Virus record (IMG/VR): IMGVR_UViG_3300023184_000027 | Coordinates: 143,953-207,952 of that record | Reading direction: 5' to 3' (one strand) | DNA: 64,000 nt | The notes under the pieces: generated by a model | What the model saw: only the letters and a program-made list of their open reading frames with translations | Database searches by the model: none | Told to the model about the DNA's origin: nothing | Made by a program: the position numbers and the translations under genes | Shown here: positions 16,500-64,000 of the stretch, in pieces | Layout of the letters: every line of letters begins with the position of its first letter | How positions within the stretch are numbered: the first letter of the stretch is position 1

Positions 16500-19400
16500 T
16501 TAAAATGACCCAATATCACCAACAATATTCCACTCACATATGTTTGTCAAAATATATCGTGCATTACTTGCGGATACTGATGTGTATAAAAACCCGGGTA
16601 CATCTAATCTAACACCAATTGCGACGTTATTGGTTAATCGTAATTGCGACCATTTAATTAACAAATTATTATAATTTGTTGAGCTCATCGGTGTAGTGTT
16701 GGTAAACATATATATCATTGATTGAACTTTACTAATATTCCAGTTGGATATGTCTTGACTAAAACTTGTATTGTAAGAAAACATTGACGACATATTATTC
16801 ACATTACTTACATTCCAAGAGTTAAGGGGTTGATTGAATGATGAAGTGTTAAACATTGAGCTCATACTGGTAACATTACTTACATCCCAATTATTGATTG
16901 ATTGATTGAATAAATTATTTTCCGTAAACATTCCAGTCATATTAGTGACTTTACTAACATCCCAATTACCGATTGGTTGGTTAAAAGATGACCTTCTAAA
17001 CATATATGACATATCAGTAACATTACTCACATTCCAATTACCGATTGGTTGATTGAATGGTGTGCCATGGAACATATACGACATATCGGTAACACCACTC
17101 ACATTCCAAGATGAAATATTTTGGTTAAATGATGAATTATAGAACATTTGAGACATAGACACAACATTACTAACATCCCAATTATTAATGTTTGGTTGAT
17201 TAAAAGATGTGTTATAACTAAACATACCACCCATATATCGGATACCACTAATATTCCAAGACGATATATCTTGATTGAATTGTGTACCATCAAACATAGA
17301 TGATAAACTAGTAATATATCTTAAATCCCAAGAAGTAATATTATTAATTGTTCTTATACTATGACATTTATAAAATAATCCAGAAATTGTTATATAACCA
17401 TAATTTTCCTCTTCATCATAATCGGTAAGGTTTAAAACCCCAATAACAGAATCTAACGTTAAATTAACACAATAGCTAAATTGTGCGTATGTTCCCCCTC
17501 TTAAAGAGAAATTTCCCCAATTTAATATAGAATATATTTTATAGTTATTTGGGTAAATACCACTATCCTCATAATCCAAAGCTTCGTCAGAATTAAATTC
17601 CCATCCACGCACTAAACCAGTTACCTTAATAATATAATAACCTATCGACGAGTAAGTGTGGGCTCTATTTGCATAACTATTCACAGAAGTTGTTCCATCA
17701 CCCCAATCTATCGTACCACCATAATTTCCATCAACAATATATGGGAGAGTTATTGTATCGTTTATAACTAATGTTCTCCACCTTGATGTAAAGTCATTTC
17801 CATACGGATTTGGTGTTCTTGTTGGTGTCCGAGTCATTGTAGGGGTTTGAGTTATTGTAGGTGTTGGACTCATTGTTATTGTAGGTGTTGGTGTTGGTGT
17901 AGGGGCAACAACTAATGTTGTTAAACCATTTTGATATAAATAAACATCTGAAAATACAGAACTTCCATCAACATATCTTTGAAATATTTTTACATATATA
18001 AAACTTACGTAAGTTGAGTAGGTTTGGAACGTAGTCGTTGTTGTACAAGTCATATTATTAGTGTTGGCCCATGTAACATTATCAAACGAATAATATATTG
18101 ACATAAATTGACAAGGTAATGTATTACCAATTACCATATAGACCTGATATACTGTTGTACTTCTTTGAATGATACTAGATATGGTTGGTACTAATTGAGG
18201 TCCACTCACTATTGGTGTTGTAGTTGGTGTTGGTGTAATTGTTGGTGTTGTGGTTTTTGTTGGTGTTGGTGTCGGAGTTACCGAGGGAAACGTGTATAGA
18301 ACAACATTTGAATAATCACTATTAGTACTATTACTTGAACAATATTGGATAAGTCTAACATATACATCTCCGGTTGTTTTAAACGAATTAAAACTAATTG
18401 GGGAAGAGCAATTTGTCTCCCCATAAGTTACACTAGCGTATCCCCAACTAATGTTATCGTAAGAATATTGTACTATCACACTATTACAGGAAACTGGAGG
18501 AGTAAAATCAACTAATAATGTGCTGGATGAGAGATTACTAACACTTATAATTGTTGGTGGAAGACACGATGTTTCCGATATCGGAGTAATTACCACCCCT
18601 CCCGAATATAGAGATATGTCAGAATAAATCACTGTTTGACTACCAACATAAGTTTGACCAATTTTAATATAGACAATCCCTGTATAACTAAATGAGCCAA
18701 AGGGAAATAATGAACCACAATTATATACTCCGTAATAAGACCAATCAACATTATTAAAAGAATAATATAGTATTATATTTAGACAAGCACTGGTATTCCC
18801 TGGTGTTACAAATATATTATATGTTGAACCACCTGTTCTAACAATGTTAGTTATTACAGGAAGATTTTGAGCTCCTAATCCCGGGGTTGGCGTTGGTGTA
18901 GGTGTTGGTGTGGGTGTTGGTGTGGGTAGAGAGGTTGTGAAAGCGTCATTTGTATATAACGCAATATTTGAATAACTCTCAACACCATAAATTGATATTT
19001 GTTTAATTTTCACATATATAGTACCTGAACTATCCAAAGAGGTACTTAGACCAACGGGTGAACTACAACTATTTGATGTACCACTAAACCATGTTATATT
19101 ATCTAACGAACCATACGATAAAACACTATTACAAGGGTAATTATTTGCTGTTGTAAAATAAATTAAATAATAATTTATGGATACTCTTTGTACATTATAG
19201 ATTATTGGTGTCTCATAAATTATACCACTTGTTTGTGTTGGTGTTTGTGTTGGTGTTTTAGTGTTTGTCGGTGTTGGAGTTGAAGTTTTAGTGTTTGTTG
19301 GTGTTTGTGTAGGTGTTTTAGTCGGAGTTCTTGTTGGTGTTGATGTTAATGTTGGTGTCGGGGTTAGAGTTGGTGTTTTTGTTAAAGTTTTAGTTGGTGT

Positions 19401-22400
19401 TGGTGTTTTAGTTGGGGTTTTAGTTGGGGTTGGAGTTTTAGTTGGGGTTGGAGATAATCCTGGTGTTGGTGTTAGTGTTGGTGTTGGAGTTGGATTTAAA
19501 CCTTTTGTTGGTGTTGGTGTTTGTGTTGGTGTTTTAGTTGGTGTTGGTGTTTGTGTTGGTGTTTTAGTTGGCGTTTTAGTTGGCGTTGGAGTTTTAGTGT
19601 TTGTAGGTGTTGGTGTTGGTGTAACTGATATAGCATCGCCGGTTATTATCCAACCAAAAGTATTTATAAGCACACCTCGTGGATTGTCCTCTATTATGGT
19701 ATATGTTAATCCGACAGCACCTAACGGAACATTATATTTTTTTATTGGTAACACCGACCATTTTAATAATAAATTATCATAATTTGTTAAGCTCATAGTA
19801 CTTCCGTTAAACATGTTCTCCATGTTAACGACTGATTTAATATCCCAATTTGATATATCTTGATTAAATAGTGTTGAATAGAACATACCTCCCATATGAG
19901 TCACATTACTAACATTCCAATTACCAATTGGTTGGTCAAATTGACAATCGTAGAACATACCACGCATTGTAGTTACCCCACTAACATTCCAATTTTCAAG
20001 ACTTTCATTATATTTTGAATTACGAAACATATAACTCATGTTAACAACACTATTGACATTCCAATCACCTATTGGTTGATTAAACGATGAGACGTAAAAC
20101 ATATAAGACATATCTTTAACGTTACTAACATTCCAGGAGTTAAGAGATTGATTAAATAATGATGTGTTAAACATATGTGACATATTGGTAACACCGCTAA
20201 CATTCCAACTAGAGATATCTTGATTAAATTTTGAAGACGCGAACATATATATCATATTACGAACATTACCAACGTTCCAATTTGAAATATTTTCATCAAA
20301 AATTGTTGCGTTAAACATATAACTCATATTAATAACTTTTGATGTGTCCCAATTATTTAAATCTTGATTAAATGGTGTTGAATAAAACATGTATGTCATA
20401 TTGGTAACATTACTAACATTCCAATTACCTATTGGTTGATTAAACGATGCGTTATAAAACATAAATGACATATCGGTAACATGACTAACAACCCAATTTG
20501 ATATATCTTCATTAAATATTGACCCTCTAAACATCCCTAACATAGTCGTAACACTACTAACATCCCAATTTGATATACCCTGATTAAACACAGACTCTCT
20601 AAACATACTTGTCATAGTCGTAACACTACTGACAACCCAATTACCGATTGGTTGATTAAATGATGAAGAGTAAAACATAGATGACATATCTTTAACATTA
20701 TTAACATTCCAATCACCGATTGGTTGGTTAAATCTTGATAAAGTAAACATATTTGACATATCAATAACGTTACTAACATCCCACATAGAAATATCTTGGT
20801 CAAATAACGATGAAGTAAACATACTTCTCATATCTGTTACATTACTAACATCCCAAGTCGATATGTCTTGGTTAAATAATGAATCATAAAACATGGTTGC
20901 CATATTGGTAACACTACTAACGACCCAATTACCGATTGGTTGATTAAATATTGATTTATAAAACATGTTTGACATATCGGTAACATTACTAACATCCCAA
21001 TTTGATATATCTTGATTAAACGATGTGTTATAAAACATTCCTGTCATATTTGTTATATTACTAACATCCCACAATTCTATATTATTAATTAAGGTTAAAT
21101 TGGTACAATTAAAGAATAACCGGTATAAACTAGTTGTGCCTGTTAATGTTAATGCGTCGTTAACATTGTCTAAAACTAAATTAGTACACCCATAAAAACA
21201 AGAAGTACTATTCCCTAAATTTAAACAACCCCAATTAACTATTGATAAGAGCTTAGTTTTGTCAATATTATTCCCAAAAGACCACTTTACTACCACACCA
21301 GTTATTGTAATTGTATAATCACCACCATCAGCATAAATGTGTTTTCTGTTTGCATAACTATTCACAGAAGTCGTTCCATCCCCCCAATCTATCGTACCAC
21401 TATATGTTCCTCCGACTACATAAGGTAATGTAACACTATTAAATGACGATTTTAACCTCCATGTTGATATAAAATCTAGATTATGTGATATTACTATTGG
21501 GGTGGGTGTAGGTGTTGGTGTTAGAGTTTCTGTTGGTGTATTAGTTGGGGTTGAAGTGTTAGTTGGGGTTAAAGTCAAGGATAATCCTGATGTTGGTGTA
21601 GGTGTAGGTGATAATCCTGGCGTTGGAGTTGGAGTTGATGTCTCTGTAGGAGTTGGAGTGGGTGTCTCTGTAGGAGTGACTTCAGGAGTGACTAATGTAT
21701 AGTCAATATATACAACCTCACCAAAAGTGAAATTGGTGTTTGTTTGATTTACTAATGTAATCCCCGCTTCCGAAACAGTGTCTATAAAATAACCACTTTC
21801 GTCGCTAAGTATCTGAACTGAATCTGACCCACCACTAAACACCGCAACAGATTCATTCTGACCAATTGTAAGTAAAAAATTATTACCAACCATATTACCA
21901 AAATAATCGGTTTGATTAACACCATTATTATCAATGTTATTAAAATATATTCCACCATTCTCTGATATATTATTAGGGTTATTATCTGCAATATGTAAAC
22001 TATAATTAGCCAATAATGTTTCACCTGATAATGGAATATCAATATTACTTATTAAAGAATACGGAATACCATCATTTATTGATGATATATCGAGAGAATT
22101 AATTAATAATATGGATTCGGAAAATTTATACTGTGTGTTCTCAATAAAATAACCATCAATTGTTATATCACCTACAATACAATCGATGGATGTTATTGGT
22201 AAATTTATAACTCCAGGTCCATAAACAAACCAACCAACCTTTATATCACATAAATTAGTGTTAGAAAATTTACCTATGTTTCCTGTTGGGTTTTGATTGG
22301 TATATGGCCCTAAAAATGATTGAGTTGGGGTTGCAGTTGGAGTTGGAGTTGGAGTATTCGTAGGTGTTTGGGTTGGTGTTTGGTCCGGTGTTTGGTTTGG

Positions 22401-22643
22401 AGTTACTCGTATTCTTTCATATTTTATATCTGAAGGTGGCCAACTAATACTCGTTAACACTCTTATACGACCTAAACTATTATTACTAGAAGAAAAAGTC
22501 CCATTAATGCACCAAATATTTTTTATTTGGTTTGGCATTAACTCCACCTGTCTTTTCCAAACAGAATCAGACAAATTTTGAAAAGTTATAGTTATTTTTT
22601 CATCACCATCATTTATTACCACTAGTCTTTGACCTATTGACAT
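16500..22643 (-). CDS. Giant surface/virion protein: two PKD-like + DUF285 (BspA-like) repeat blocks, four Fn3-like repeats, Pro/Thr stalks
   Basis: TIDWGDGT x2; many [20 protein letters not shown] repeats; long TPTPTKTP runs; no signal peptide. Confidence 0.85.
19230..19625 (-). repeat. Longest Pro/Thr (mucin-like) low-complexity tract
   Basis: About 130 codons of [10 protein letters not shown]; shorter tracts near 17810-17905, 18215-18285, 18880-18930, 21500-21690, 22320-22410. Confidence 0.9.
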
Positions 22644-22667: not shown

Positions 22668-23771
22668 TTATGTTGGTATCTCAACGGCAAAACAAATTTC
22701 ACCATGTTCTCTTATTAATCTTTCCATATCAGCAAATGAAATATAGGAGTGTCCTGATTGACCCCAAGATTTTCCCCAACTATTTTTAATTCTGAAAAGT
22801 CTCGTCACCGTATTAACACCATTAATAACATAAGCGTGTCCTCCAGCAATACGACCACTAATTCTAATTAAACCATTTCTATCTGGATAAAACATCCCAT
22901 TATACCAATTAGTTCCAACAACAACAGGACCTAAATTTAAAACAGAATTTATTAAACTTGTTAAATCAAAACCCCAATAATAGGAAGAAACTTTACGAAC
23001 ACTTTGTAAATATTTAACACCACCTCTAACTGATGTACCATCATAATTCTCACCAACCCATTCGTCAACTCTTTGAGCGTTTTCATAAATAACCCTAGGC
23101 GGTATTATCGGAGCAACCCCACTTTGAGGAACCGGACCATCTTCTAACCAATGAGCCCAAGCATATCCAACACATTGGGGTGTATTACCTTGGTTACCCC
23201 ACCATCCATTATCATCCCAGTATCTATTGGTAATTCTAACAGGTACGGCACTTAAAAGATTATTTATAGAATATTTATGGTCTCTTTCATCAGGTATATA
23301 TTGTCTACCTAATTGATATGTTTTATTAATACTTTCTATAAGAACAATTGGTTCGTTAACACAACAAGGAAATTCTGAAACATAACAACTATCATACACC
23401 AAATCATCGGCAATGAATGATTCCTGAACATTAATATTAAGTTTTTCTCTAATTGGTAAGATAAGTACACCATCAGAATTTCTTAACATAAACTCACCTT
23501 CATACCTACCAACACGATTGGTGTCTTTGGATGTGAATTGGTAATATATGTAATATTCTGGTTCGGCATTGGGGTCTATTGAGGTTTTCTCAACAAATCC
23601 ACCCGGTCTTGAAGTAATTTTTGGTATTCCCGTTTCTACATCTACCATTGAAAAGAAAATTGACGATAACTCTATGGTTTTCATAAAATTATTGTAATCA
23701 CTTCTTCCATCTTTTACGACTTGGAATTTTAAAACAGGTAAAGTCGAGTTTTTCTTAATAAAAAAATCCAT
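22668..23771 (-). CDS. BppU-like baseplate/fibre-attachment domain fused to papain-like (C1) cysteine peptidase
   Basis: N-term FFIKKNSTLP...YQFTSKDTNRVGRYEGEF; C-term NQGNTPQCVGYA, GGHAYVING, IKNSWGKSWG. Confidence 0.8.
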   Translation of the reverse strand: MDFFIKKNSTLPVLKFQVVKDGRSDYNNFMKTIELSSIFFSMVDVETGIPKITSRPGGFVEKTSIDPNAEPEYYIYYQFTSKDTNRVGRYEGEFMLRNSDGVLILPIREKLNINVQESFIADDLVYDSCYVSEFPCCVNEPIVLIESINKTYQLGRQYIPDERDHKYSINNLLSAVPVRITNRYWDDNGWWGNQGNTPQCVGYAWAHWLEDGPVPQSGVAPIIPPRVIYENAQRVDEWVGENYDGTSVRGGVKYLQSVRKVSSYYWGFDLTSLINSVLNLGPVVVGTNWYNGMFYPDRNGLIRISGRIAGGHAYVINGVNTVTRLFRIKNSWGKSWGQSGHSYISFADMERLIREHGEICFAVEIPT

Positions 23772-26254: not shown

Positions 26255-26263
26255 TATTGTAAT

Positions 26264-26959: not shown

Positions 26960-26964
26960 TTTTT

Positions 26965-27648: not shown

Positions 27649-27667
27649 TATATTTTAATTTATTTTT

Positions 27668-45806: not shown

Positions 45807-45815
45807 TTAATTATG
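45083..45815 (+). repeat. Direct repeat copy 1 (~730 bp)
   Basis: Colinear with 48474-49205 up to and including the next ATG. Confidence 0.95.
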
Positions 45816-46718: not shown

Positions 46719-46722
46719 TATT

Positions 46723-49748: not shown

Positions 49749-49756
49749 ATAATTAT

Positions 49757-51902: not shown

Positions 51903-51928
51903 AAAAAACCCCAATTAAGGGGTTTTTT
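51903..51928. terminator. Bidirectional intrinsic terminator
   Basis: AAAAAACCCC-AATTAA-GGGGTTTTTT between convergent genes. Confidence 0.85.
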
Positions 51929-52803: not shown

Positions 52804-52815
52804 ATTTGTTTTTTT

Positions 52816-54076: not shown

Positions 54077-54100
54077 AAATTATAACATATATTTGTGTTA

Positions 54101-54129: not shown

Positions 54130-54160
54130 CCCTATTAGGGCAAATAATAATGGGGTTTGT

Positions 54161-55102: not shown

Positions 55103-55105
55103 AAA

Positions 55106-55975: not shown

Positions 55976-55976
55976 A

Positions 55977-56849
55977 TTATGAAATTACTGTTATTATGAC
56001 TAATCCGTCACCTCCGTCACCTCCGTTACCGGCAACAACAGAACCGGCACCTCCACCACCGCCTCCACAGCCGTACCATCCATTACCTCCTGTTCCACCT
56101 GTTCCTGTAGTAATTCCGGCACCGCCTGCTCCTCCTGTCCCACACAATGTAGAAAGATTTCCGTAACCAGAATCACCATTTTGTCCCGCAGTCACACCAC
56201 CATTCACTTGAGAAGTTAGTATAGATGTTGCTGATGTTATATTTCCTCCTGTTCCAAAGACAGAAGCTGTCTTTCCTCCACCACCAGCACCACCCATAAC
56301 AATGTTTGTTCCTAAAGCGGCTTGAGATGTTCCGTTAGTACCTGTGTTGGCACCACCAGCTGACCCAGCAACTCCAGCAACTGAAGTAAATAACCCTAAA
56401 CCTGTAAATGTAGGACTTACAGCGATAGTAGGGGCGGTTCCACCAACTCCTGCTGAGGTTCCTCCATTTCCACTACTTTGAGACGACTTACATAACGTTA
56501 ATGTTGAACCATTATCAACAGACACGTAAGATATGCTACCAGAACCTCCGGTACCATTTGATACTATTCCACCTTTCCCACCTTTCCCAACAAATATATA
56601 TAGAATATCTGGTAATAAAAAGGCTGGTACAATCATTCTCACCATTCCCGCCGAAGCACCACCACCCGCACCAGTTACTCCCGCAGCACCAATAGTACAG
56701 TGTCCACCACCTGCTGCACCACCTAAACAAAATATCTCTAAAAATTTTGCATTACGAGGTTTTTGAAATGGTTGATATTCACCTGTCGCATAAAATGTAT
56801 AGGTAGATTGTGTATTTGTATTGGTTGTTATGTTAAAAACATCTATCAT
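55977..56849 (-). CDS. Glycine-rich tail-fibre-type protein, paralog 1
   Basis: FQKPRNAK...LGGAAGGG; GGDGGDGLVII. Confidence 0.75.
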   Translation of the reverse strand: MIDVFNITTNTNTQSTYTFYATGEYQPFQKPRNAKFLEIFCLGGAAGGGHCTIGAAGVTGAGGGASAGMVRMIVPAFLLPDILYIFVGKGGKGGIVSNGTGGSGSISYVSVDNGSTLTLCKSSQSSGNGGTSAGVGGTAPTIAVSPTFTGLGLFTSVAGVAGSAGGANTGTNGTSQAALGTNIVMGGAGGGGKTASVFGTGGNITSATSILTSQVNGGVTAGQNGDSGYGNLSTLCGTGGAGGAGITTGTGGTGGNGWYGCGGGGGGAGSVVAGNGGDGGDGLVIITVIS

Positions 56850-57028
56850 TATTCAGCCCAAGTTGGTTTAGGTGGATTAGAGTCCACAACATATCCCTCA
56901 ATAGGAAAATCGGGAGATATAAGAGTATTTCCGTTTAAATCAGTTAACCTAACTAAATTCCCATTACTTATTTCTTGATACGCTTGAAAATCCCATCCAA
57001 GAGTATATTGTATTAAAATATATTCCAT
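56849..57028 (-). CDS. Small 59-aa protein missed by the ORF track (possible fibre assembly factor)
   Basis: MEYILIQYTLGWDFQAYQEISNGNLVRLTDLNGNTLISPDFPIEGYVVDSNPPKPTWAE; TAATG coupling at both ends. Confidence 0.75.
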   Translation of the reverse strand: MEYILIQYTLGWDFQAYQEISNGNLVRLTDLNGNTLISPDFPIEGYVVDSNPPKPTWAE

Positions 57029-57444
57029 TAGTATTTTCCTCCAATAACACTTACAAAGTAACCCGCAGCAACTGTTGTACCAAGAGTCACATTTAGTTTA
57101 TATCCCGCGGGTAAGGCAAAGTTAAGAGGTAATTCATACACGGCTAATGCTGCCACCTCGGATAATGTTGTCGCTGCTAAAGTAATCTCATCAAATAATA
57201 TGTTATTTCCTGCCGTACTATTTGCTGACCCATTATTAATGAATACCCTTGCCACGGTGGCGATATTAGTCCCCGCTGCTCTGAATCTTATTCTTTGAAC
57301 AAACCCTCCGTTTGTGGCGTCTGCTGTGAAGCAAGTAAGAACAGTACCTGTTCCGTCTTTTGCGGTGTTAAGTGTTGTTATTGCTGTTGTTCCCCATTGA
57401 ACATCTCCAGCTAATGAGAAGATAGGTGCGGTATTTGCTGCCAT
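57028..57444 (-). CDS. Small Ala/Thr-rich beta-sandwich virion protein
   Basis: MAANTAPIF...TVARVFINNG...LFDEITL...LPAGYKL; fibre operon context. Confidence 0.65.
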   Translation of the reverse strand: MAANTAPIFSLAGDVQWGTTAITTLNTAKDGTGTVLTCFTADATNGGFVQRIRFRAAGTNIATVARVFINNGSANSTAGNNILFDEITLAATTLSEVAALAVYELPLNFALPAGYKLNVTLGTTVAAGYFVSVIGGKY

Positions 57445-57488
57445 TTTGTATTGTTTTTATTTTAAATTTAGTGTTATTTTTATAATTG

Positions 57489-60400
57489 TCAAAACATATT
57501 TTGAAATCCTGTTGAAAATACTTGTAATAATCCTAATGTAAGAATAGTTGGAGCTGGACTTGTTCCGCTTGTTCCCGCAATTCCTGATGTTCCTGATGAA
57601 CCACTACTACCAATACCACTAGTTCCTGATGAACCACTATTACCAATACCACTAGTTCCTGAAGAACCACTACTACCAGGTGTTGTTGTAACTAATAAAC
57701 CGTTTGAACCAACACAGATTGAACATCCTGATGAACCTGTGAAACTACAAACAGATAAATCATTAACAAATGTAGTACAACTTCTGTTTGCTGTGATACA
57801 ACTACCTATAACATTAGCGTGTTGAAATGATGCCGATATTGTGTTATTTCTACCACCAAGTATTGATGAATAAACTGAACAAGCGCTATTACATAAACCA
57901 CCGGCAATCGTTGATGAACATCCACAAGTTATATTACAAGCACCACCACCAATAAACATAAAACAAGCTCCTGAACTGGCTGAAGTACAGTTTTTATAAC
58001 CACCTGATATTGTCGAACAACCATTGTTACCAACATTACTATTACATTTTCCACCGCCAATTGTTGAATTAGAACCAGAAGCAGTATTTGAACTACCACC
58101 GCCAATTGTTGAACTACTACCACCAGCAGTATTTCCAAGACCTCCACCAATTGTTGAACAAGCTCCCGTTGCACAGTTTCTATATCCACCACCGATGGTT
58201 GATAATCTACCAGCATCACAACAAGTGGTTGTTCCTGTTAAGTCCCCTGTTATTGCGTTAAATGTTCCACCTGATGTATTGTGTCCAATACCTCCACTGA
58301 TTGTGGCACCTAAAGAACAACATTCGTTTGTTGGTGATTGAATAACATTTCTTTGTCCACCACCAATAAATGAGAATCTAGCGGTTATTGTATTACAACC
58401 TCCACCAACAATTGTTGATGTACATCCAGTTGTGACATTACAACATCCACCTCCAATAACTGAATAATTCGATGATGTAGTATTACAAAATCCTCCACCA
58501 ATAACTGAGTTGCCTCCAGATACTTTATTACCACATCCACCCCCGATTGCAGAACCACTTGAATTTATGCAAATACAATTAGTACATCCTCCAGCGATAG
58601 TTGTAAAGGAACTAGTGTCAATAGAATTAGATTTACCACCACCAATAAACATACCAACTCCACCCGAACCCCCACAAGCTATATTACAACAACCACCACC
58701 AATAGTTGACGAACAATTATTACCTGTTATAATGTTACAATAACCACCACCAATTGTTAATAAAGCGGCTCCACACGATTTATTACAATAACCACCACCA
58801 ATAACAGAGTTACTGGTGCTAATTAAATTTTTTTGACCACCGGCGATAACTGAACAAGCTCCTGTCACACAGTTTCTATATCCACCACCAATGGTTGATA
58901 ATTTACCAGCATTACAACAAACAATTGTCCCTGATAAAATACCTGTTGATGAGGTAAATGTTCCTCCTGAAGTATTATGTCCAATACCTCCACCGATTGT
59001 TACACCTAATGAACAACATTCGTTTGTTGGTGATTGAATTATATTTCTATGACCACCGTTTATATTTGAGAATTTTGAGTTTGTTATATTACAATAACCA
59101 CCAAGAATTGATGAGCTATTACCTGAAATGCTATTTCTATATCCACCACCAATAAATGACCTATCGGAAAATGTATTATTTGATTCACCACCACCAATAG
59201 TTGAAACATTACCTATTGTGCAATTATTACAACCACCTCCAATAAATGAGAAATTACAACAACTAACGTTACTCTTACCACCAACAACTGATGACAAACA
59301 ACCTTTTGAGCAGTTTCCATAACCACCACTAATTGTTGAACAATTTCCGCAACTAACATTACATTGACCACCACCAATAAATGAACTTTCACCAATAACA
59401 GTATTAGACTGCCCACCAGCTATGGTACCTAAACCATATGGTACACATATTTTATTATTGTATCCTCCACCAATGGTATTACTACCAACTGGGTTAAAAG
59501 TACCTGTATTTGAGAAAATAACATTACAGCAACCACCACCAATAGTATTGGGTCTAATTGCGTAGCTAGAATTATCAACAGTAAAATTACAAATAATATT
59601 TCTATTACCACCAACAATTGTTGAGTATTTGGCAACTACAGTGTTATTTTCACCACCACCAATAAATGATGTCTGCCCTGATGCTATATTACCTTGACCA
59701 CCAACAACCACAGATGCGTATCCAAATGATGTGTTACGACGATATCCAATATTAGAATTGGGTTTTCCACCACCAACAAATGAAAATGTTCCAGATGCTA
59801 AATTTTGAGAACCTCCGACAACTGTTGAAAAACATGCTGATGCGGTATTTCCGCTACCGGCTAATGCGGCTGAAAAACATGATGTTGCGGTATTACCAAC
59901 ACCACATCTAATGGTTGAGTTAACACCTGTTCCGGTAATGATTATACTATCACCACCTCCACCTGAGCTTGTTCCGCTAGACCCAGATATACCTGATGTT
60001 CCAGCCACTCCATTTGCCCCTGATGTTCCTGAAGAACCAACACCACTTGTTCCACTAGAACCTGCAATACCTGATGTTCCTGATGAACCACTTACGCCAA
60101 TACCACTTGTTCCACTAGAACCTGCAATACCTGATGTTCCTGAAGAACCACTTACGCCAATACCACTTGTTCCACTAGAACCTGCGGCTCCTGATGTTCC
60201 GCTTGTTCCTCTAGTACCAGACGCTCCTGACGTTCCTGAAGAACCACTATTACCAGTACCACCTGATGTTGTTACCAATAAACCATTTGCTCCAACACAG
60301 ATTGAACATCCTGATGAACCTGTGAAACTACAAACAGATAAGTCATTTACAAATGTTGTACAAGCTCTGTTTGCTGTTATATTACTACCAATAATATTAG

Positions 60401-63400
60401 AATTTGTAAATCCTGACGATATTAAATTACTTTTACCACCAAGTATGGATGAATAAGTTGCGTAAGCACTATTACAATAACCACCACCTATCATTGAATA
60501 ATTACCGTAAGATTTATTCACACGACCACCACTAATTGTTGAAACCCGTCCTTTTGCAATATTACCGACACTGACATATATATCAGTATACTCTGGGTAA
60601 CCTGAATTTCCGGTACATACACATCCACCACCACCACCTATTGTTGAGTAATGACCACAAGAAACATTATTACTACCACCACCTATTGTTGAATAACTGC
60701 AGTTGGTGATATTTGAATCACCACCGCCAATTGTTGAAAAACTACAACAAGCTCTATTTAAAACACCACCACCAATTGTTGAATTAGTACCAGATGCGGT
60801 ATTTGAACTACCACCGCCAATTGTTGAACTACTACCACAAGCAGTATTTCCAAGACCTCCTCCGACTGTTGAGGCTAAATAAGATGAGGTGTTATCTGCA
60901 CCCCCAGCAACTGTTGAGAATATGACTCCGGAAGCGGTGTTACCTCTACCACCACCAATTGTTCCCCCATAACCAGATACAGAGTTACCTTTACCACCGA
61001 CTATTGTTGTATAATAACCACAAGAAACATTATTACGACCACCACCAATAAATGAAAAATTACATGACGCAGTGTTTCCACTACCGGCTAATGCTGCAGA
61101 ACAATTTCCTGATGCAGTATTTCCAACACCACATCTCATAGTTGAGTTAACACCTGTTCCGGTAATGATAATACTATCACCACCTCCACCAGAACTTGTT
61201 CCGCTTGTTCCGGCAATACCAGCTGCTCCTGAAGTTCCTGAAGAACCTGTTGCTCCTGAAGAACCTGTTGCTCCTGAAGAACCCGATGTTCCACTTGCTC
61301 CGGTACCACTTGTTCCGCTAGAACCTGTTGCTCCTGAAGAACCTGTTGCTCCTGAAGAACCAGATGTTCCACTTGCTCCTGATGAACCTGTTGCTCCTGA
61401 AGAACCTGAAGTTCCGCTTGCTCCTGATGAACCTGTTGCTCCTGAAGAACCATCGGCACCACTAGAACCTGAAGTTCCGCTTGCTCCTGATGAACCTGTT
61501 GCTCCTGAAGAACCACTTGTTCCACTAGAACCATTCGCACCTGATGTTCCCGAAGAACCGCTAGTTCCTGATGTTCCGCTAGTTCCCGAATTTGTTGGTG
61601 ATAATGTTGTTGTTACTTGTCCAATAGTACTATCATTGAAGTACATTGTAAGCACTTTAGTGTAAGGTGAGTCGATAGCGATACCATATAATTCTATAAG
61701 AATTCTATCTGACGGCACGACATTAGTTGCCGAAATAGGTATTGAAAATAAATATAAGGTAGGGACAAGGTGACTATCTATTGGAACAGGAACGGGAGTA
61801 ACAGTAGATAACAACGTAGTTGTCCCTCCAGTATGATATGCGTATATTCTCGCATATATTCCGTGGTCGGCATTTGTTGCGGTAGTATTAGCGTATAATT
61901 CAAAATTCCAATTCCCACCCACAATATTACTAATATTGGGGTCATTATTAGGTGTTATGAATGTCCCAAATAATTGTGCTGTTGCCCCTGATAATGTTTG
62001 AGATAAAGATGTTTGTCCGCTAATACTAATTACCCGGTCTAAATCATAATATGATACACTTCCAGCACCTTGATTAGGTATATTTCTATTGAAGTAATAA
62101 ACTAATCCTGTTGAAAATCCGTTAATACCGCTAGACCCTGAAGAACCATCGGCACCACTAGAACCAGATGTTCCGCTTGCTCCTGATGAACCTGTTGCTC
62201 CTGAAGAACCATCGGCACCACTAGAACCAGATGTTCCACTTGCTCCGCTAGAACCTGTTGCGCCTGAAGAACCTGTTGCACCTGAAGAACCTGATGTTCC
62301 ACTTGCTCCCGATGTACCTGAACTACCACTTATTCCAGAAGAACCTGAAGTTCCGCTAGAACCACTTGTCCCAGAAGAACCATAAGTCGCTCCAAGAGTT
62401 GTAATAACATAAGAATAATAGGTAGTACCTTCCGTATACCAAGTAACGTCACGATTACTTGTACCTTGGTAAACCACATATATTTTAACAATCATTCTGT
62501 CTGATGGTAGAATGTAGTATGATGACGGTATCACTAAATCTACATACACTTCAACAGGGATTGATACTCCTACCCATCCAATAATCGTTTGATTGGTTGA
62601 TATTACTGTTCCGTAACTTGTCCCCCCACTATTAGCTAACTCTATTGTACAAAAAACATCAGTATTATCATTCACATTATTTTTTAACATATGTAAATGG
62701 AATCGTTGACTTCCTGGTGGAATAACGTTAACACCTAATCCTGATGCGTCGGTGATAAATTCTTGAACTAACACAGGAGTTAAACCATTTGTTGTTTTCA
62801 GAATAGTTTGAGTTGATGCAGTTGTTGGTAATGTACCGATTTGTTTGTAAGATAATGGTGTTTGTGTTACGGATTGATTAAAATAAAATATTTGTCCTGA
62901 CGCAACACCACTTATACCGCTAGTTCCTGAAGTACCGGCGGTACCATCTGAAGAACCTGATGTTCCGCTGGTACCACTTGAACCTGAAGTTCCGCTTGTT
63001 CCACTTTCACCTGAAGTTCCGCTTGTTCCATATGTTTGACCACTTGAACCTGCTGAACCGCTTTCACCTGATGAACCACTTGTTCCACTTTCACCTGATG
63101 AACCACTTGTCCCACTTTCACCTGATGTTCCACTTGTACCACTTTCTCCTGACGAACCACTTTCTCCTGACGAACCACTTTCACCTGAAGAACCGCTTGT
63201 TCCACTTTCACCTGAAGAACCGCTTGTTCCACTTTCGCCTGATGTTCCAGAAGTTCCTTTAGTCCCTGATGAACCAGAAGTTCCGCTAGACCCTGAAGAA
63301 CCTGCTGCTCCTGACGCTCCATCAAGATTTGTTGTCCAAGATAAAAAAGTTCCAGTACCATTTATAACGGTTACGGTAACTTGTAAATCACCTGTTGATG

Positions 63401-64000
63401 CGGAGTAAGATATAACATCACAAAGAAATTTATTTGTGTTAGAATTGGCAATAATTAAATGTTGTCCTATTGTGTAAGATAATCCTGTTGATGTAGTTAA
63501 TGATAATGTCTGGCCACTAACTAAAGTTGATAAGTTTATATTATCGGTTGAATATCCAATAACCCCTAAACTAGTTCCTGAAGAACCTGAAGTCCCACTT
63601 GTTCCTGACGACCCACTTGTTCCTGATGAACCTGATGTTCCGCTAGAACCTGAAGTCCCGCTAAAACCTGAAGTTCCGCTAGAACCTGAAGTCCCGCTAG
63701 AACCGCTAGAACCTGAAGTTCCTTTAGTTCCTGAAGAACCACTAGTTCCTGAAGAGCCACTTGTTCCTGATGTTCCACTAGAACCTGAAGTTCCTTTAGT
63801 CCCATCTGTCTCACCACTTGTTCCTGAAGTCCCTGAAGTCCCTGAAGTACCTTTAGTACCATCTGTCATACCGCTTGTTCCTGAAGTTCCGCTTGTTCCT
63901 GAAGTTCCGCTTGTTCCTGAAGTTCCGCTAGAACCGCTAGACCCAGAAGTCCCTCTAGTCCCTGAAGTTCCTGAAGAACCGCTAGTTCCGGATGTACCAC
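57489..64000 (-). CDS. Giant fibre protein: Gly-Ser/Thr collagen-like tracts plus Cys-rich STIGGG beta-helix repeats; 5' end outside the window
   Basis: Frame stays open from 63869 to the window edge (GTSGTSGSSG...), so the track's start is internal; internal module duplications. Confidence 0.85.
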   Translation of the reverse strand, partial: GTSGTSGSSGTSGTRGTSGSSGSSGTSGTSGTSGTSGTSGTSGMTDGTKGTSGTSGTSGTSGETDGTKGTSGSSGTSGTSGSSGTSGSSGTKGTSGSSGSSGTSGSSGTSGFSGTSGSSGTSGSSGTSGSSGTSGTSGSSGTSLGVIGYSTDNINLSTLVSGQTLSLTTSTGLSYTIGQHLIIANSNTNKFLCDVISYSASTGDLQVTVTVINGTGTFLSWTTNLDGASGAAGSSGSSGTSGSSGTKGTSGTSGESGTSGSSGESGTSGSSGESGSSGESGSSGESGTSGTSGESGTSGSSGESGTSGSSGESGSAGSSGQTYGTSGTSGESGTSGTSGSSGTSGTSGSSDGTAGTSGTSGISGVASGQIFYFNQSVTQTPLSYKQIGTLPTTASTQTILKTTNGLTPVLVQEFITDASGLGVNVIPPGSQRFHLHMLKNNVNDNTDVFCTIELANSGGTSYGTVISTNQTIIGWVGVSIPVEVYVDLVIPSSYYILPSDRMIVKIYVVYQGTSNRDVTWYTEGTTYYSYVITTLGATYGSSGTSGSSGTSGSSGISGSSGTSGASGTSGSSGATGSSGATGSSGASGTSGSSGADGSSGATGSSGASGTSGSSGADGSSGSSGINGFSTGLVYYFNRNIPNQGAGSVSYYDLDRVISISGQTSLSQTLSGATAQLFGTFITPNNDPNISNIVGGNWNFELYANTTATNADHGIYARIYAYHTGGTTTLLSTVTPVPVPIDSHLVPTLYLFSIPISATNVVPSDRILIELYGIAIDSPYTKVLTMYFNDSTIGQVTTTLSPTNSGTSGTSGTSGSSGTSGANGSSGTSGSSGATGSSGASGTSGSSGADGSSGATGSSGASGTSGSSGATGSSGASGTSGSSGATGSSGATGSSGTSGTGASGTSGSSGATGSSGATGSSGTSGAAGIAGTSGTSSGGGGDSIIITGTGVNSTMRCGVGNTASGNCSAALAGSGNTASCNFSFIGGGRNNVSCGYYTTIVGGKGNSVSGYGGTIGGGRGNTASGVIFSTVAGGADNTSSYLASTVGGGLGNTACGSSSTIGGGSSNTASGTNSTIGGGVLNRACCSFSTIGGGDSNITNCSYSTIGGGSNNVSCGHYSTIGGGGGCVCTGNSGYPEYTDIYVSVGNIAKGRVSTISGGRVNKSYGNYSMIGGGYCNSAYATYSSILGGKSNLISSGFTNSNIIGSNITANRACTTFVNDLSVCSFTGSSGCSICVGANGLLVTTSGGTGNSGSSGTSGASGTRGTSGTSGAAGSSGTSGIGVSGSSGTSGIAGSSGTSGIGVSGSSGTSGIAGSSGTSGVGSSGTSGANGVAGTSGISGSSGTSSGGGGDSIIITGTGVNSTIRCGVGNTATSCFSAALAGSGNTASACFSTVVGGSQNLASGTFSFVGGGKPNSNIGYRRNTSFGYASVVVGGQGNIASGQTSFIGGGENNTVVAKYSTIVGGNRNIICNFTVDNSSYAIRPNTIGGGCCNVIFSNTGTFNPVGSNTIGGGYNNKICVPYGLGTIAGGQSNTVIGESSFIGGGQCNVSCGNCSTISGGYGNCSKGCLSSVVGGKSNVSCCNFSFIGGGCNNCTIGNVSTIGGGESNNTFSDRSFIGGGYRNSISGNSSSILGGYCNITNSKFSNINGGHRNIIQSPTNECCSLGVTIGGGIGHNTSGGTFTSSTGILSGTIVCCNAGKLSTIGGGYRNCVTGACSVIAGGQKNLISTSNSVIGGGYCNKSCGAALLTIGGGYCNIITGNNCSSTIGGGCCNIACGGSGGVGMFIGGGKSNSIDTSSFTTIAGGCTNCICINSSGSAIGGGCGNKVSGGNSVIGGGFCNTTSSNYSVIGGGCCNVTTGCTSTIVGGGCNTITARFSFIGGGQRNVIQSPTNECCSLGATISGGIGHNTSGGTFNAITGDLTGTTTCCDAGRLSTIGGGYRNCATGACSTIGGGLGNTAGGSSSTIGGGSSNTASGSNSTIGGGKCNSNVGNNGCSTISGGYKNCTSASSGACFMFIGGGACNITCGCSSTIAGGLCNSACSVYSSILGGRNNTISASFQHANVIGSCITANRSCTTFVNDLSVCSFTGSSGCSICVGSNGLLVTTTPGSSGSSGTSGIGNSGSSGTSGIGSSGSSGTSGIAGTSGTSPAPTILTLGLLQVFSTGFQNMF

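What the first reader, a model, noticed from the sequence alone, without database searches (positions are those of the whole stretch)
16500..64000. Candidate phage-encoded virion 'glycocalyx' system: glycan enzymes interleaved with Thr- and Ser-rich giant surface proteins
Seen: about 47 kb alternates signal-peptide-less giant proteins bearing long TPTPT or GTS/GSS tracts (16.5-22.6, 30.7-42.0, 57.5-64 kb) with three enzyme blocks (23.8-30.6, 42.0-51.9, 51.9-54.1 kb). These hold roughly a dozen GT domains, Glf, an RmlD-like reductase, three methyltransferases, a sulfotransferase and APS kinase. No flippase, polymerase, undecaprenyl-P transferase or membrane GT is recognisable. Known: virion glycosylation occurs in chloroviruses, mimiviruses and some mycobacteriophages; GT60 and TibC/Aah are protein-acting families. 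Inference: a complete cytoplasmic pathway (initiate, elongate, methylate, sulfate) coats the virion with mucin-like glycans, rather than converting host LPS or modifying DNA.
Basis: partly seen in the sequence, partly recalled or inferred. Interest (0 to 1): 0.9.

Follow-up and report, generated by a model that had tools for sequence, protein, structure and literature searches.

The report
Phage-encoded protein O-glycosylation system for fibre proteins
A large uncultured freshwater phage carries about 18 soluble sugar-handling enzyme genes packed between its own threonine/proline-rich and serine-rich collagen-like fibre proteins, and comparison with hundreds of relatives suggests the phage sugar-coats its own proteins, which is known in only a few phages and never at this scale.

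Summary
Window 16.5-64 kb holds five proteins with TPTPT tracts, one Pro-free collagen-like giant (183 G-[T/S/A]-S triplets) and 18 enzyme ORFs without membrane segments.

Two enzymes belong to families that act on proteins:
- a GT60 polypeptide GlcNAc-transferase homologue (PF11397, 238 bits);
- a TibC/Aah O-heptosyltransferase domain (TIGR04414, 276 bits against a cutoff of 200).

Comparative genomics supports enzyme-substrate coupling in two modules.
- **Module 1.** In 47 of 47 distinct related phage loci the gene just upstream of GT60 is co-directional, and in 38-42 of them it carries a PT tract, against 8.5% of other ORFs. The same PT-protein -> GT60 -> HtrL-like order recurs in 68%-GC contigs of Gemmatimonadaceae bins. 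GT60 also sits beside (TP)n-tailed VgrG spikes in two Burkholderiales T6SS loci.
- **Module 2.** TibC-like genes lie within about 3.5 kb of GSS/GTS collagen-like giants in four further phage lineages.

Between conserved GT60 and HtrL-like genes sits a swap-prone tailoring cassette (57 families).

XacN1, a cultured distant relative, has Schiff-positive virion proteins.

Glycosylation itself, the sites, the sugars and virion location are inferred, not shown. Verdict: a new variant of phage virion glycosylation.

The parts
16500..22643 (-). Giant PT-tract protein, 2047 aa, with 8 DUF285 (BspA-type LRR) stretches. Candidate glycan acceptor and a lineage-specific insertion.
   Evidence: Pfam DUF285 3.4e-228. 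Five TPTPT tracts. Homologues in only 12 of 80 related loci. No signal peptide or TM segment.
22668..23771 (-). Backbone gene. Conserved 140-aa Ig-like N-terminal domain plus a variable C-terminus, here a papain-like peptidase.
   Evidence: N-terminus conserved in 72 loci. phrog_16701 peptidase 2.6e-55. BppU_N E = 0.078, below threshold. The AF2 model is an Ig-like sandwich; best TM 0.51 to the phage NF5 baseplate chain 9m8o_P.
23818..25494 (-). HtrL_YibB-like protein, 558 aa. Conserved partner of GT60 and a putative second (core) transferase.
   Evidence: PF09612 3.2e-20. Found in 71 of 80 phage loci, in XacN1 and in 26 of 47 genome-bin loci with GT60.
25496..29331 (-). Variable tailoring cassette of five ORFs: unknown/weak GT (25496-26254), methyltransferase-fold (26264-26959), FkbM O-methyltransferase (26965-27648), GT25 (27668-28438), GT10 (28435-29331).
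   Evidence: Pfam and NCBIfam hits. The slot holds 1-8 ORFs from 57 families in relatives.
29336..30583 (-). GT60-family polypeptide alpha-GlcNAc-transferase homologue. Proposed initiator on Thr of PT tracts.
   Evidence: PF11397 3.5e-70, 237.6 bits. phrog_24687 2.8e-168. Invariant IDSH motif. 432 IMG/VR relatives. No TM segment.
30684..34214 (-). PT-tract protein, 1176 aa, with a Fib_succ_major domain, directly upstream of GT60.
   Evidence: Separate ORF also in L004/L005.
34254..38723 (-). PT-tract protein, 1489 aa, with two strongly hydrophobic helices (aa 370-446).
   Evidence: A 33%-identical homologue sits upstream of GT60 on a Saprospiraceae contig, L116.
38737..40779 (-). Adhesin-like protein, 680 aa (Flg_new_2 plus Fib_succ_major), without a PT tract.
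40851..41969 (-). Conserved candidate substrate: two small Cys-rich beta-sandwich domains joined by a conserved TPTPTPTxTPTPT tract, then a long PT linker and a variable C-terminal domain.
   Evidence: N-terminal 154 aa conserved in 54 loci. Alignment A1 has invariant T77/T79/T81/T83. AF2 pLDDT about 90 for residues 1-73 and 88-155, linker disordered.
42043..44793 (+). Multidomain transferase, 916 aa: GT4 domain plus two GT-A-like (GT25-like) regions.
   Evidence: PF00534 2.1e-10. Atlas leads. 88-91% identical in close relatives.
44793..49748 (+). Variable slot of block 2: GT-A-like lead (44793-45806), RmlD (45813-46718), unknown (46675-47385), Glf/UDP-galactopyranose mutase (47349-48497), 86%-identical partial duplicate of 44793-45806 (48481-49200), methyltransferase (49203-49748).
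   Evidence: RmlD and Glf are absent from the related loci fetched.
49730..51901 (+). GT4 domain fused to a TibC/Aah-type protein O-heptosyltransferase domain (aa 395-721). Proposed initiator on Ser of the collagen-like repeats.
   Evidence: TIGR04414 3.7e-82, 276.3 bits, cutoff 200. TibC 4RAP 1.1e-46. CxxC...C...C retained.
51903..51928 (.). Bidirectional terminator-like hairpin between the convergent blocks.
   Evidence: 10-bp stem with a T-run.
51928..54076 (-). GT9-like protein (51928-52803), APS kinase (52816-53343) and sulfotransferase (53255-54076).
   Evidence: 92-98% identical in close relatives. The same trio lies between the TibC-like gene and a collagen-like giant in the distinct lineage L090.
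54161..57444 (-). Three Gly_rich_2 paralogues (313, 289, 290 aa) and a 138-aa ORF: minor-tail-like proteins, variable among relatives.
   Evidence: PF21722. Minor tail protein phrog_2683 (2.1e-05) and, weakly, phrog_416 (0.0022). Replaced by a 725-aa ORF in L083-L085.
57489..64000 (-). Pro-free collagen-like giant (at least 2169 aa, cut by the contig end) with G-[T/S/A]-S repeats. Tail-fibre-like candidate acceptor.
   Evidence: Collagen 2e-59. Triplet statistics. Tail-fibre PHROGs, e.g. phrog_5073 1.2e-56. Frame open to the window end.

Best explanation
The region is a two-module, phage-encoded, cytoplasmic protein O-glycosylation system. It acts on the phage's own fibre and adhesin-like proteins before or during virion assembly.

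**Module 1 (16.5-42 kb).** A soluble GT60 enzyme puts a first sugar, most likely GlcNAc, on Thr of TPTPT tracts. The conserved HtrL-like protein extends it. A swap-prone cassette (here GT10, GT25, FkbM methyltransferase and others) finishes the glycan.

**Module 2 (42-64 kb).** A GT4-TibC/Aah fusion decorates Ser in the Pro-free G-T/S-S collagen-like tail-fibre protein. Other enzymes elongate and tailor the glycan: a GT4-(GT-A)2 protein, a GT9-like protein, Glf (galactofuranose), RmlD (rhamnose), a methyltransferase and an APS-kinase/sulfotransferase pair (sulfation).

**Shown:** family membership, solubility, gene order, and the conservation and variability patterns.

**Inferred:** that glycans are attached, the acceptor residues, the sugars, virion location of the PT proteins, and the benefit. 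Possible benefits are stiff, protease-resistant, hydrated linkers and rapidly changeable surface chemistry.
For: 1. **Protein-acting families.** GT60 PF11397 scores 237.6 bits. GT60 enzymes start mucin-type O-glycans with GlcNAc on Ser/Thr-rich domains (PMC8724618). The TibC/Aah equivalog scores 276.3 against a cutoff of 200, with the Cys4 motif kept.
2. **Packing.** Enzymes and candidate acceptors are interleaved in tight co-directional arrays with gaps of 1-100 nt.
3. **GT60 with PT tracts in phages.** The ORF just upstream of GT60 is on the same strand in 47 of 47 distinct loci. It carries a PT tract in 38 (regex) to 42 (window measure) of them, against 46 of 542 other ORFs. The apparent exceptions hold PT proteins elsewhere in the locus.
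4. **GT60 with PT tracts far from this lineage.** PT-protein -> GT60 -> HtrL occurs in 68%-GC contigs of Gemmatimonadaceae bins. Two PT proteins precede GT60 on a 3-Mb Saprospiraceae contig, and one precedes it on a Desulfobacterales chromosome. GT60 also lies 2.5-3.7 kb from VgrG spikes with (TP)n tails in T6SS loci of Achromobacter and Paraherbaspirillum.
5. **TibC-like with collagen-like.** The TibC-like gene lies within 0-3.5 kb of GSS/GTS collagen-like giants in L089, L090, L092, L093 and the cultured Microcystis phage Mel-JY01. That is 5 of 10 lineages, counting the window's own, against 1 of 80 GT60-centred loci.
6. **Conservation pattern.** GT60 is as conserved as PolB (78-100% against 68-98%). 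The cassette next to it has 57 families, dominated by sugar O-methyltransferases, GT25, GT10, GT34, GT2, PLOD-GT, carbamoyl- and aminotransferases. This is the pattern of a fixed initiator with a diversifying glycan.
7. **Experimental hint.** XacN1 has GT60, HtrL-like, GT9, a PT-rich ORF350 next to structural genes and a PT-bearing 3313-aa ORF325 after baseplate wedge genes. Its virions show at least two Schiff-positive bands (PMC5852040).
8. **No export machinery.** No TM segment in any enzyme and no flippase, polymerase or phosphoglycosyl transferase in the window.
Against: - There is no biochemical evidence for this phage.
- PT tracts are also common as plain flexible linkers.
- Most synteny counts within the lineage are inherited, so they are not independent events and the Fisher p-values overstate support.
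- GT25, GT10, GT4 and GT9 are typical LPS or polysaccharide families. Soluble-looking GTs also serve lipid-linked pathways, so lack of TM segments is weak evidence.
- One bacterial-bin locus (L114) has a WbaP-type sugar transferase 4 kb from the GT60 trio.
- Five of ten TibC-like lineages show no collagen-like gene within 10-15 kb.
- Virion location of the PT giants is unproven. Fold searches of the conserved N-terminal domains gave only generic beta-sandwich or weak baseplate matches.
- The GT60 member Gnt1 acts on hydroxyproline (background knowledge; PMC11570480 describes the Skp1 glycan as attached to hydroxyproline). No prolyl hydroxylase was found here.
- The probable Bacteroidota host may not make ADP-heptose, so the TibC-like donor is uncertain.
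Confidence: 0.62

Rival explanations
1. The enzymes remodel the host cell envelope (LPS, capsule or S-layer glycan) during infection. Possible purposes are blocking superinfection or stopping progeny from sticking to debris. On this reading the PT and collagen-like proteins are ordinary unglycosylated fibres that share a variable accessory island.
For: GT25, GT10, GT4, GT9, RmlD, Glf and FkbM are classic O-antigen or capsule families. The cassette variability resembles O-antigen loci. L114 has a WbaP-like transferase near the GT60 trio.
Against: - GT60 and TibC/Aah are known only as protein-modifying families (PMC8724618; TIGR04414 equivalog).
- No initiating phosphoglycosyl transferase, flippase or polymerase is present.
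- GT60 is glued to a PT-protein gene across phages, bacterial-bin loci and T6SS loci, which envelope remodelling does not explain.
- XacN1 virions contain glycoproteins.
Confidence: 0.17
2. Mixed use. Only the two initiators and a few partners glycosylate phage proteins. Part of the enzyme set (for example the sulfation pair, RmlD/Glf and some GTs) serves another target such as host glycans, small molecules or DNA hypermodification.
For: RmlD, Glf, the 44793-45806 ORF and its partial duplicate 48481-49200 are absent from the related loci fetched, and the methyltransferase is absent from the closest relatives. The sulfotransferase acceptor could not be assigned. Phage GTs that build DNA glycans are known (cited in PMC12619734).
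Against: - The APS kinase, sulfotransferase and GT9-like trio tracks the TibC-collagen module in an unrelated lineage, L090.
- No T4-type DNA glucosyltransferase family was hit by Pfam in the window.
- The variable genes sit inside the same co-directional arrays.
Confidence: 0.15
3. The association is non-functional. PT tracts and collagen-like repeats are just linkers of hypervariable receptor-binding proteins. GT genes accumulate beside them because both sit in recombination hot spots next to the tail module.
For: Both gene classes are highly variable and the islands differ between phages with 98%-identical PolB. Within-lineage synteny is inherited.
Against: - GT60 and HtrL-like are not variable. 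They are as conserved as PolB.
- The PT-GT60 adjacency recurs at 41-54% GT60 identity in genomes of 29-70% GC, including T6SS loci with no phage tail module.
- The short PT tract inside the conserved N-terminal region has invariant Thr positions.
Confidence: 0.06

Closest known systems
Mycobacteriophage virion glycosylation (Freeman et al. 2023, as summarised in PMC12619734)
   Same: Phage-encoded glycosyltransferases are proposed to glycosylate the phage's own structural proteins in the cytoplasm of the infected cell.
   Different: There, a few GTs modify C-terminal extensions of capsid and tail-tube subunits. Here there are about 18 enzyme ORFs, two different initiator families (GT60 and TibC/Aah), PT-tract and collagen-like fibre proteins as candidate acceptors, methylation and sulfation, and a hypervariable tailoring cassette. 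The original paper was not available to read.
Xanthomonas jumbo phage XacN1 glycoproteins (PMC5852040)
   Same: It shares GT60 (48% identity), HtrL-like, GT9, PolB proximity and PT-bearing proteins. Its virions have Schiff-positive bands, and the authors suggested the phage GTs make them.
   Different: In XacN1 only two GTs were recognised, the glycoproteins were not identified, and no link to PT tracts, GT60 or a modular system was drawn. It has no TibC-collagen module or sulfation genes in the region examined.
GT60 pp-alpha-GlcNAc-transferases of protists (Dictyostelium, Trypanosoma cruzi) and cytoplasmic Gnt1
   Same: Clear family match. It lacks a membrane anchor, like Gnt1. The candidate acceptors are Thr/Pro-rich mucin-like tracts, as for the protist enzymes (PMC8724618).
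   Different: Viral and bacterial rather than eukaryotic, and acting in a bacterial cytoplasm. Activity, donor and acceptor residue are untested.
TibC/Aah bacterial autotransporter heptosyltransferases (BAHT)
   Same: Scores above the equivalog cutoff, the Cys4 iron-finger is retained, and it is a soluble cytoplasmic enzyme that hyperglycosylates Ser in repetitive passenger domains.
   Different: There is no autotransporter partner. The enzyme is fused to a GT4 domain, and its recurrent neighbour is a Pro-free G-S/T-S collagen-like phage fibre. The donor sugar is unknown.
Giant-virus fibril and capsid glycosylation (mimiviruses, chloroviruses; reviewed in PMC9614988, PMC7019647)
   Same: Virus-encoded, host-independent glycosylation machinery with sugar-nucleotide enzymes, methyltransferases and many GTs. 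Collagen-like proteins are present. GT25+HtrL fusions occur in Nucleocytoviricota (Atlas lead).
   Different: Those are eukaryotic viruses with different acceptors (major capsid protein, fibrils). Here it is a tailed phage with PT and collagen-like fibres and different initiators.
BclA-type collagen-like exosporium glycoproteins of Bacillus (from memory, not tested here)
   Same: Collagen-like G-X-T repeats are O-glycosylated with rhamnose-containing, methylated oligosaccharides, encoded next to rml genes.
   Different: That is a bacterial spore surface with Pro-containing triplets. No homology was tested.

Membership tests
CAZy GT60 / Pfam PF11397 polypeptide alpha-GlcNAc-transferase | Sequence match to the family HMM above the curated threshold. 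| tested here: met
   PF11397 3.5e-70, 237.6 bits against a cutoff of 21.
CAZy GT60 / Pfam PF11397 polypeptide alpha-GlcNAc-transferase | GT-A type metal-binding DxH/DxD motif. | tested here: met
   'QIDSH' is invariant in the window protein, four diverged phage homologues and XacN1. Assigning it as the catalytic motif rests on knowledge of GT27/GT60.
CAZy GT60 / Pfam PF11397 polypeptide alpha-GlcNAc-transferase | Transfers GlcNAc from UDP-GlcNAc to Thr/Ser (or Hyp) of a polypeptide. | not testable with these tools
   Only gene-neighbourhood support: PT-tract proteins sit adjacent.
TibC/Aah autotransporter O-heptosyltransferase (TIGR04414) | Score at or above the equivalog cutoff of the NCBIfam model. 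| tested here: met
   276.3 bits against a cutoff of 200, residues 395-721. TibC 4RAP 1.1e-46. LPS heptosyltransferase models reach only E of about 1e-3.
TibC/Aah autotransporter O-heptosyltransferase (TIGR04414) | Four-cysteine iron-finger motif. | tested here: met
   CxxC...C...C aligns with TibC. That these Cys bind iron is from memory of the TibC structure paper.
TibC/Aah autotransporter O-heptosyltransferase (TIGR04414) | Adjacent autotransporter substrate with strand-loop-strand repeats. | tested here: not met
   No autotransporter in the window. The neighbours are collagen-like giants instead. It therefore works like a BAHT but is not a canonical autotransporter system.
TibC/Aah autotransporter O-heptosyltransferase (TIGR04414) | ADP-heptose donor and dodecameric assembly. 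| not testable with these tools
   Not addressed. No heptose synthesis genes in the window.
Wzx/Wzy- or ABC-dependent polysaccharide (O-antigen/capsule) locus | Initiating phosphoglycosyl transferase, flippase or ABC exporter, and polymerase, all integral membrane proteins. | tested here: not met
   No such Pfam or NCBIfam hit and no TM segment in any enzyme ORF. The rest of the phage genome was not examined.
Phage DNA glycosylation (T4 alpha/beta-glucosyltransferase type) | A DNA glucosyltransferase family and hydroxymethyl-pyrimidine synthesis genes. | tested here: not met
   None among the Pfam or PHROG hits of window ORFs. Only this 64-kb window was searched.
Phage virion glycosylation (mycobacteriophage type) | Glycans covalently attached to virion structural proteins by phage GTs. 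| not testable with these tools
   Indirect only: Schiff-positive virion bands in XacN1, and tail-fibre or minor-tail family hits for the collagen-like and Gly-rich proteins.

The most novel reading that the evidence does not exclude
PT tracts plus a GT60/HtrL pair may form a general, previously unrecognised cytoplasmic mucin-type O-glycosylation code for contractile-injection machines. It would be core to a globally abundant lineage of freshwater jumbo phages of Bacteroidota and shared with T6SS VgrG spikes of Burkholderiales. A second, independent TibC-like pathway would put sulfated glycans on Pro-free collagen-like fibres. Both would carry O-antigen-like swappable cassettes that diversify the glycan on the virion surface.
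Probability: 0.3. Interest if true: 0.9.

Novelty: new variant of a known kind. Interest (0 to 1): 0.78.

Why it matters
Glycosylation of phage particles is documented for only a few phages, and its rules are unknown.

- **A testable enzyme-acceptor grammar.** If this system works as proposed, GT60 pairs with TPTPT tracts and TibC-like enzymes pair with G-S/T-S repeats.
- **Scale.** The GT60 gene alone has more than 7,400 sequence clusters at 90% identity in metagenomes and 432 relatives in IMG/VR, so the phage lineage is very widespread.
- **Surface diversification.** It would show that phage surface glycans diversify by cassette exchange, as bacterial O-antigens do.
- **A possible first.** It would add sulfated glycans to phage biology.
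- **Reach beyond phages.** The same logic may extend to T6SS spikes.
- **Practical use.** It offers soluble bacterial-cytoplasm O-glycosylation enzymes for glyco-engineering. Glycan shields also affect phage adsorption, stability and immune recognition.

Tried and rejected
- **Megablast of 25 kb against INPHARED phages:** no match. The phage is uncultured and not in that collection.
- **PDB sequence search with GT60:** only chance-level hits to T7 RNA polymerase, E about 0.01. No solved relative.
- **AF2 model of the 372-aa protein with Foldseek against PDB and BFVD:** confident small beta-sandwiches, but only uncharacterised viral matches. Virion location could not be settled this way.
- **Model of the 22668-23771 N-terminal domain:** Ig-like, with only weak baseplate and connector matches.
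- **Sulfotransferase acceptor class:** not resolved, E about 5e-3 to aryl sulfotransferases.
- **Reading 30.7-42.0 kb as one read-through giant:** rejected without any read-through. The four ORFs each have their own ATG, and they occur separately or are absent in relatives.
- **Stop-codon recoding:** ORFs of 2000 aa and more are intact under code 11, so there is no sign of it.
- **tRNA genes:** none in the window.
- **Sigma-70-like promoter counts:** not above shuffles, so no operon claims beyond gene packing and one terminator.
- **'Moraphage' identity:** a published lineage of large aquatic phages with four core GT groups and Flavobacteriia hosts (PMC12619734) may be the same or a related lineage. 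This could not be verified without its sequences.
- **Freeman et al. 2023:** could not be read.
- **Literature searches:** none found a description of GT60 or TibC-like enzymes linked to PT or collagen-like phage proteins.

Full report
**What the window is.** The 64-kb window is about 30% GC and comes from a tailed phage with a contractile tail.
- Phage genes outside the finding:
  - a 1266-aa tail sheath (1488-5288; phrog_23 3.7e-54);
  - an SNF2 helicase;
  - a superoxide-dismutase fusion;
  - a family B DNA polymerase (13618-16407).
- It has no near-identical relative among deposited phage genomes.
- It is identical to the last 64 kb of a 207,952-bp IMG/VR contig (L038 and L082). Relatives reach 322 kb, so this is a jumbo-phage lineage.
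- The closest GT60 homologues in genome bins (61-84% identity) sit mostly in Bacteroidota bins: Saprospiraceae, Lewinellaceae and Chitinophagia. This points to that phylum as host. The evidence is indirect, because it rests on co-binning.

**The observation.** It is real, with corrections.
- Five ORFs carry PT tracts. Four carry long ones, and one giant is collagen-like.
- The collagen-like protein has 183 G-X-Y triplets with X = T/S/A and Y = S in 80%, and no proline. Its frame runs off the contig end.
- The PT tracts are encoded by degenerate 6-nt repeats with 63-68% matches. This suggests selection on the peptide rather than recent slippage. They also explain the local GC-skew reversals at 18-20 and 32-34 kb.

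**The enzymes.** Eighteen ORFs in three blocks are enzymes or enzyme-like.
- Block 1: HtrL_YibB-like, a weak GT, a methyltransferase-fold protein, FkbM methyltransferase, GT25, GT10 and GT60.
- Block 2:
  - a 916-aa GT4 protein with two further GT-A-like regions (a language-model lead only);
  - a GT-A-like lead;
  - RmlD;
  - an unknown ORF;
  - Glf;
  - an 86%-identical partial duplicate of the GT-A-like lead;
  - a methyltransferase;
  - a GT4 domain fused to a TibC/Aah domain.
- Block 3: a weak GT9-like protein, APS kinase and sulfotransferase.
- Two assignments carry most of the weight.
  - GT60 scores 237.6 bits on PF11397 and keeps an invariant IDSH motif.
  - The TibC/Aah domain scores 276.3 bits against an equivalog cutoff of 200. 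It matches TibC itself at 1e-46, while LPS heptosyltransferases reach only about 1e-3. It keeps the four cysteines.
- None of the enzymes has a membrane segment. The hydrophobic start of the APS kinase ORF lies upstream of the Pfam match and overlaps the sulfotransferase gene, so it is probably a start-codon artefact.

**Gene order.**
- From 41969 down to 13618, fourteen genes run on the minus strand with gaps of 1-100 nt, alternating candidate acceptors and enzymes.
- Block 2 diverges from this array across a 73-bp gap. It ends at a clean bidirectional terminator (51903-51928).
- That terminator faces a second minus-strand array: collagen-like giant, 138-aa ORF, three Gly-rich proteins, sulfotransferase, APS kinase and GT9-like protein.

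**Module 1 in relatives.** GT60 has 432 relatives in IMG/VR; 80 loci were fetched.
- The conserved backbone is: a PT protein with a conserved 154-aa N-terminal region (the family of 40851-41969), GT60, a variable cassette, HtrL-like, a protein with a conserved 140-aa Ig-like N-terminus and variable C-terminus (the family of 22668-23771), then PolB.
- The giants at 16.5-22.6 and 30.7-40.8 kb are insertions found in few relatives.
- Among 47 non-duplicate loci, the ORF directly upstream of GT60 is always co-directional. It has a PT tract in 38 by a strict pattern, against 46 of 542 other ORFs. Four of the nine misses have TP-rich tracts by a window measure. The remaining loci that are long enough hold a PT protein elsewhere, and L059's upstream ORF is collagen-like.
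- These counts are largely inherited synteny, so the p-value is descriptive.
- In the conserved N-terminal region, two Cys-rich beta-sandwich domains (pLDDT about 90) are joined by a short PT tract whose Thr positions are invariant across homologues that are 36-57% identical elsewhere.

**The cassette.**
- Between GT60 (78-100% identity) and HtrL-like (54-100%) lie 1-8 ORFs from 57 families.
- Phages with 98%-identical GT60 and PolB carry different cassettes.
- The families are glycan-tailoring ones: Methyltransf_24, FkbM and rhamnosyl O-methyltransferases, GT25, GT10, GT34, GT2, PLOD-type GT, GT7, GT11, carbamoyltransferase, DegT aminotransferase, acetyltransferases, epimerases and a nucleotidyltransferase.
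- A fixed initiator next to a swap-prone tailoring set is what a diversifying surface glycan would produce.

**Module 1 outside the lineage.** A profile scan of species-representative genomes found 47 loci.
- HtrL-like accompanies GT60 in 26 of them.
- The order PT protein -> GT60 -> HtrL-like, with no cassette, occurs in 68%-GC contigs of Gemmatimonadaceae bins (L110, L114).
- Two PT proteins precede GT60 on a 3-Mb Saprospiraceae contig (L116). One of them is 33% identical to the window's 1489-aa protein.
- A PT protein precedes a GT60 fusion on a Desulfobacterales chromosome (L133).
- In Achromobacter (L127) and Paraherbaspirillum soli (L120), GT60 lies in a T6SS cluster (TssF 5.8e-221). It is 2.5-3.7 kb from a VgrG spike (Phage_GPD 2e-90) that ends in a (TP)n tail of about 110 aa in L127; in L120 the tail is partly masked.
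- VgrG is a cytoplasmically assembled homologue of a phage tail spike. This is an independent case of the same pairing.
- One locus (L114) also has a WbaP-type transferase nearby. That is a caution in favour of a polysaccharide role.

**Module 2.**
- TibC-like genes are rarer in IMG/VR, with 13 loci.
- In the more distant lineages, a Pro-free GSS/GTS collagen-like giant lies within 0-3.5 kb of the TibC-like gene:
  - L089, 1882 aa;
  - L090, 2190 aa, with the APS kinase, sulfotransferase and GT9-like trio in between;
  - L092, 2112 aa;
  - L093, at least 548 aa.
- The cultured Microcystis phage Mel-JY01 shows the same pairing. There the collagen-like frame is followed by an annotated structural protein and then the TibC fusion.
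- Five other lineages show no such gene within 10-15 kb. Three of those have the TibC-like gene beside the tail sheath.
- Collagen-like ORFs occur in only 1 of 80 GT60-centred loci.
- Close relatives of the window keep the GT4-916 protein, the GT4-TibC fusion, GT9-like, APS kinase, sulfotransferase and the collagen-like giant. They lack RmlD, Glf, the methyltransferase and the Gly-rich trio, and some carry other ORFs in those positions.

**Virion location.**
- The collagen-like giant matches tail-fibre PHROGs, largely through its repeats. Two of the three Gly-rich paralogues match minor-tail families, one only weakly.
- The Ig-like N-terminal domain of 22668-23771 is weakly similar to baseplate and connector chains.
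- In XacN1 the PT-bearing 3313-aa ORF325 follows baseplate wedge genes, and the PT-rich ORF350 sits beside structural and head-completion genes.
- For the window's PT giants there is no direct evidence.

**Experimental hint.** XacN1 carries the GT60, HtrL-like and GT9 genes. Its purified virions show at least two Schiff-positive bands of unidentified protein, and the authors proposed that the phage GTs make them (PMC5852040).

**Most likely mechanism.**
- Late in infection, soluble GT60 starts O-glycans on Thr of PT tracts. HtrL-like adds a core sugar and the cassette enzymes finish the glycan.
- Separately, the GT4-TibC fusion glycosylates Ser of the collagen-like repeats. Elongation, Galf and Rha addition, methylation and sulfation follow.
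- The products would be stiff, hydrated, protease-resistant fibres whose surface chemistry can change by cassette exchange.
- Shown: family membership, solubility, gene order, and the conservation and variability patterns.
- Inferred: every chemical step, the acceptor residues, virion location of the PT giants, and the benefit.
- I put 0.62 on this and 0.17 on host-envelope remodelling. I put 0.15 on mixed use and 0.06 on a non-functional association.

**Comparison and novelty.**
- Phage-made virion glycans are known in mycobacteriophages (summarised in PMC12619734) and in giant viruses (PMC9614988). XacN1 hinted at the same.
- I found no description of the following:
  - the pairing of GT60 with PT tracts and of TibC-like enzymes with Ser/Thr collagen-like repeats;
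  - the two-module architecture with O-antigen-like cassettes;
  - the sulfation genes;
  - the abundance of the lineage;
  - the T6SS parallel.
- I rate it a new variant of a known kind.

**Limits.**
- Only 64 kb of the genome was seen.
- Locus flanks were at most 10-15 kb.
- Within-lineage statistics are not corrected for phylogeny.
- High-GC ORF calls in genome bins may include wrong-strand frames. L101, L104 and L105 were not counted for this reason.
- Several domain calls rest on language-model leads.

Noticed in passing
L127:7986-15520 (Achromobacter MAG) and L120:6526-14386 (Paraherbaspirillum soli): GT60 homologues (42-45% identity) sit inside T6SS clusters (TssF, Rhs), 2.5-3.7 kb from a VgrG spike whose C-terminus is a (TP)n tail, about 110 aa long in L127 and partly masked in L120. 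This suggests cytoplasmic O-glycosylation of a T6SS spike.
   Followed up: partly
window 34254-38723 (-), residues 370-446: The 1489-aa PT-tract protein has two very hydrophobic helices (Kyte-Doolittle 19-mer up to 3.0) in an otherwise soluble, signal-less giant. This is reminiscent of membrane-inserting ejection or tape-measure-type proteins. A 33%-identical homologue lies upstream of GT60 on a Saprospiraceae contig (L116).
   Followed up: partly
window 44793-45806 and 48481-49200 (+): Residues 100-337 of the first ORF are 86% identical to the second ORF. The duplicates flank the RmlD-unknown-Glf cassette, which is absent from the related loci fetched. This looks like the scar of a recent cassette insertion.
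   Followed up: partly
window 10544-12082 (+): A phage Fe/Mn superoxide dismutase (both Pfam domains within residues 36-226) is fused to about 285 further residues of unknown function. It is conserved at 65-72% identity in relatives.
   Followed up: no
window 1488-5288 (-): The tail sheath is 1266 aa. Only its last 300 or so residues match sheath families, so about 950 residues are extra domains. The best relatives are Microcystis phage Mel-JY01 and a 484-kb uncultured phage.
   Followed up: no
window 6615-7842 (-): Three consecutive small ORFs all start with MKILITE. Two of them (7049-7453 and 7453-7842) are 40%-identical paralogues. The first (6615-7049) matches mycobacteriophage L5 gp82 (PF25735, 7.7e-29).
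   Followed up: no
window 54000-64000: GC rises from about 30% to 41-42% over the Gly-rich and collagen-like genes. This is probably codon composition (Gly, Ser, Thr, Ala) rather than foreign origin, but it was not tested.
   Followed up: no
window 52816-53343 / 53255-54076 (-): The APS kinase ORF overlaps the sulfotransferase ORF by 89 nt. Its first 29 or so residues are hydrophobic and lie outside the Pfam match, so the true start is probably downstream. The same overlap is kept in L083-L085.
   Followed up: partly
L110:7215-10972 and L114:7314-10972: A minimal trio, small PT protein (213-241 aa) -> GT60 -> HtrL-like, occurs in 68%-GC contigs binned as Gemmatimonadaceae. In L114 a WbaP-type sugar transferase lies 4 kb away. 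It is unclear whether these are prophage remnants or bacterial loci.
   Followed up: partly
L096 (LR756501.1, 735-kb uncultured phage) 10197-15984, and LR756504.1: The largest known phage genomes carry the same pair, a homologue of the 916-aa GT4 protein followed by a GT4-TibC fusion. No collagen-like gene lies within 15 kb.
   Followed up: partly
L095 (Microcystis phage Mel-JY01, PP395634.1) 2-3052: A long + strand frame with 606 residues of GSS/GTS repeats runs into the record start. The deposited annotation instead calls minus-strand ORFs there, so the collagen-like gene may be mis-annotated.
   Followed up: no
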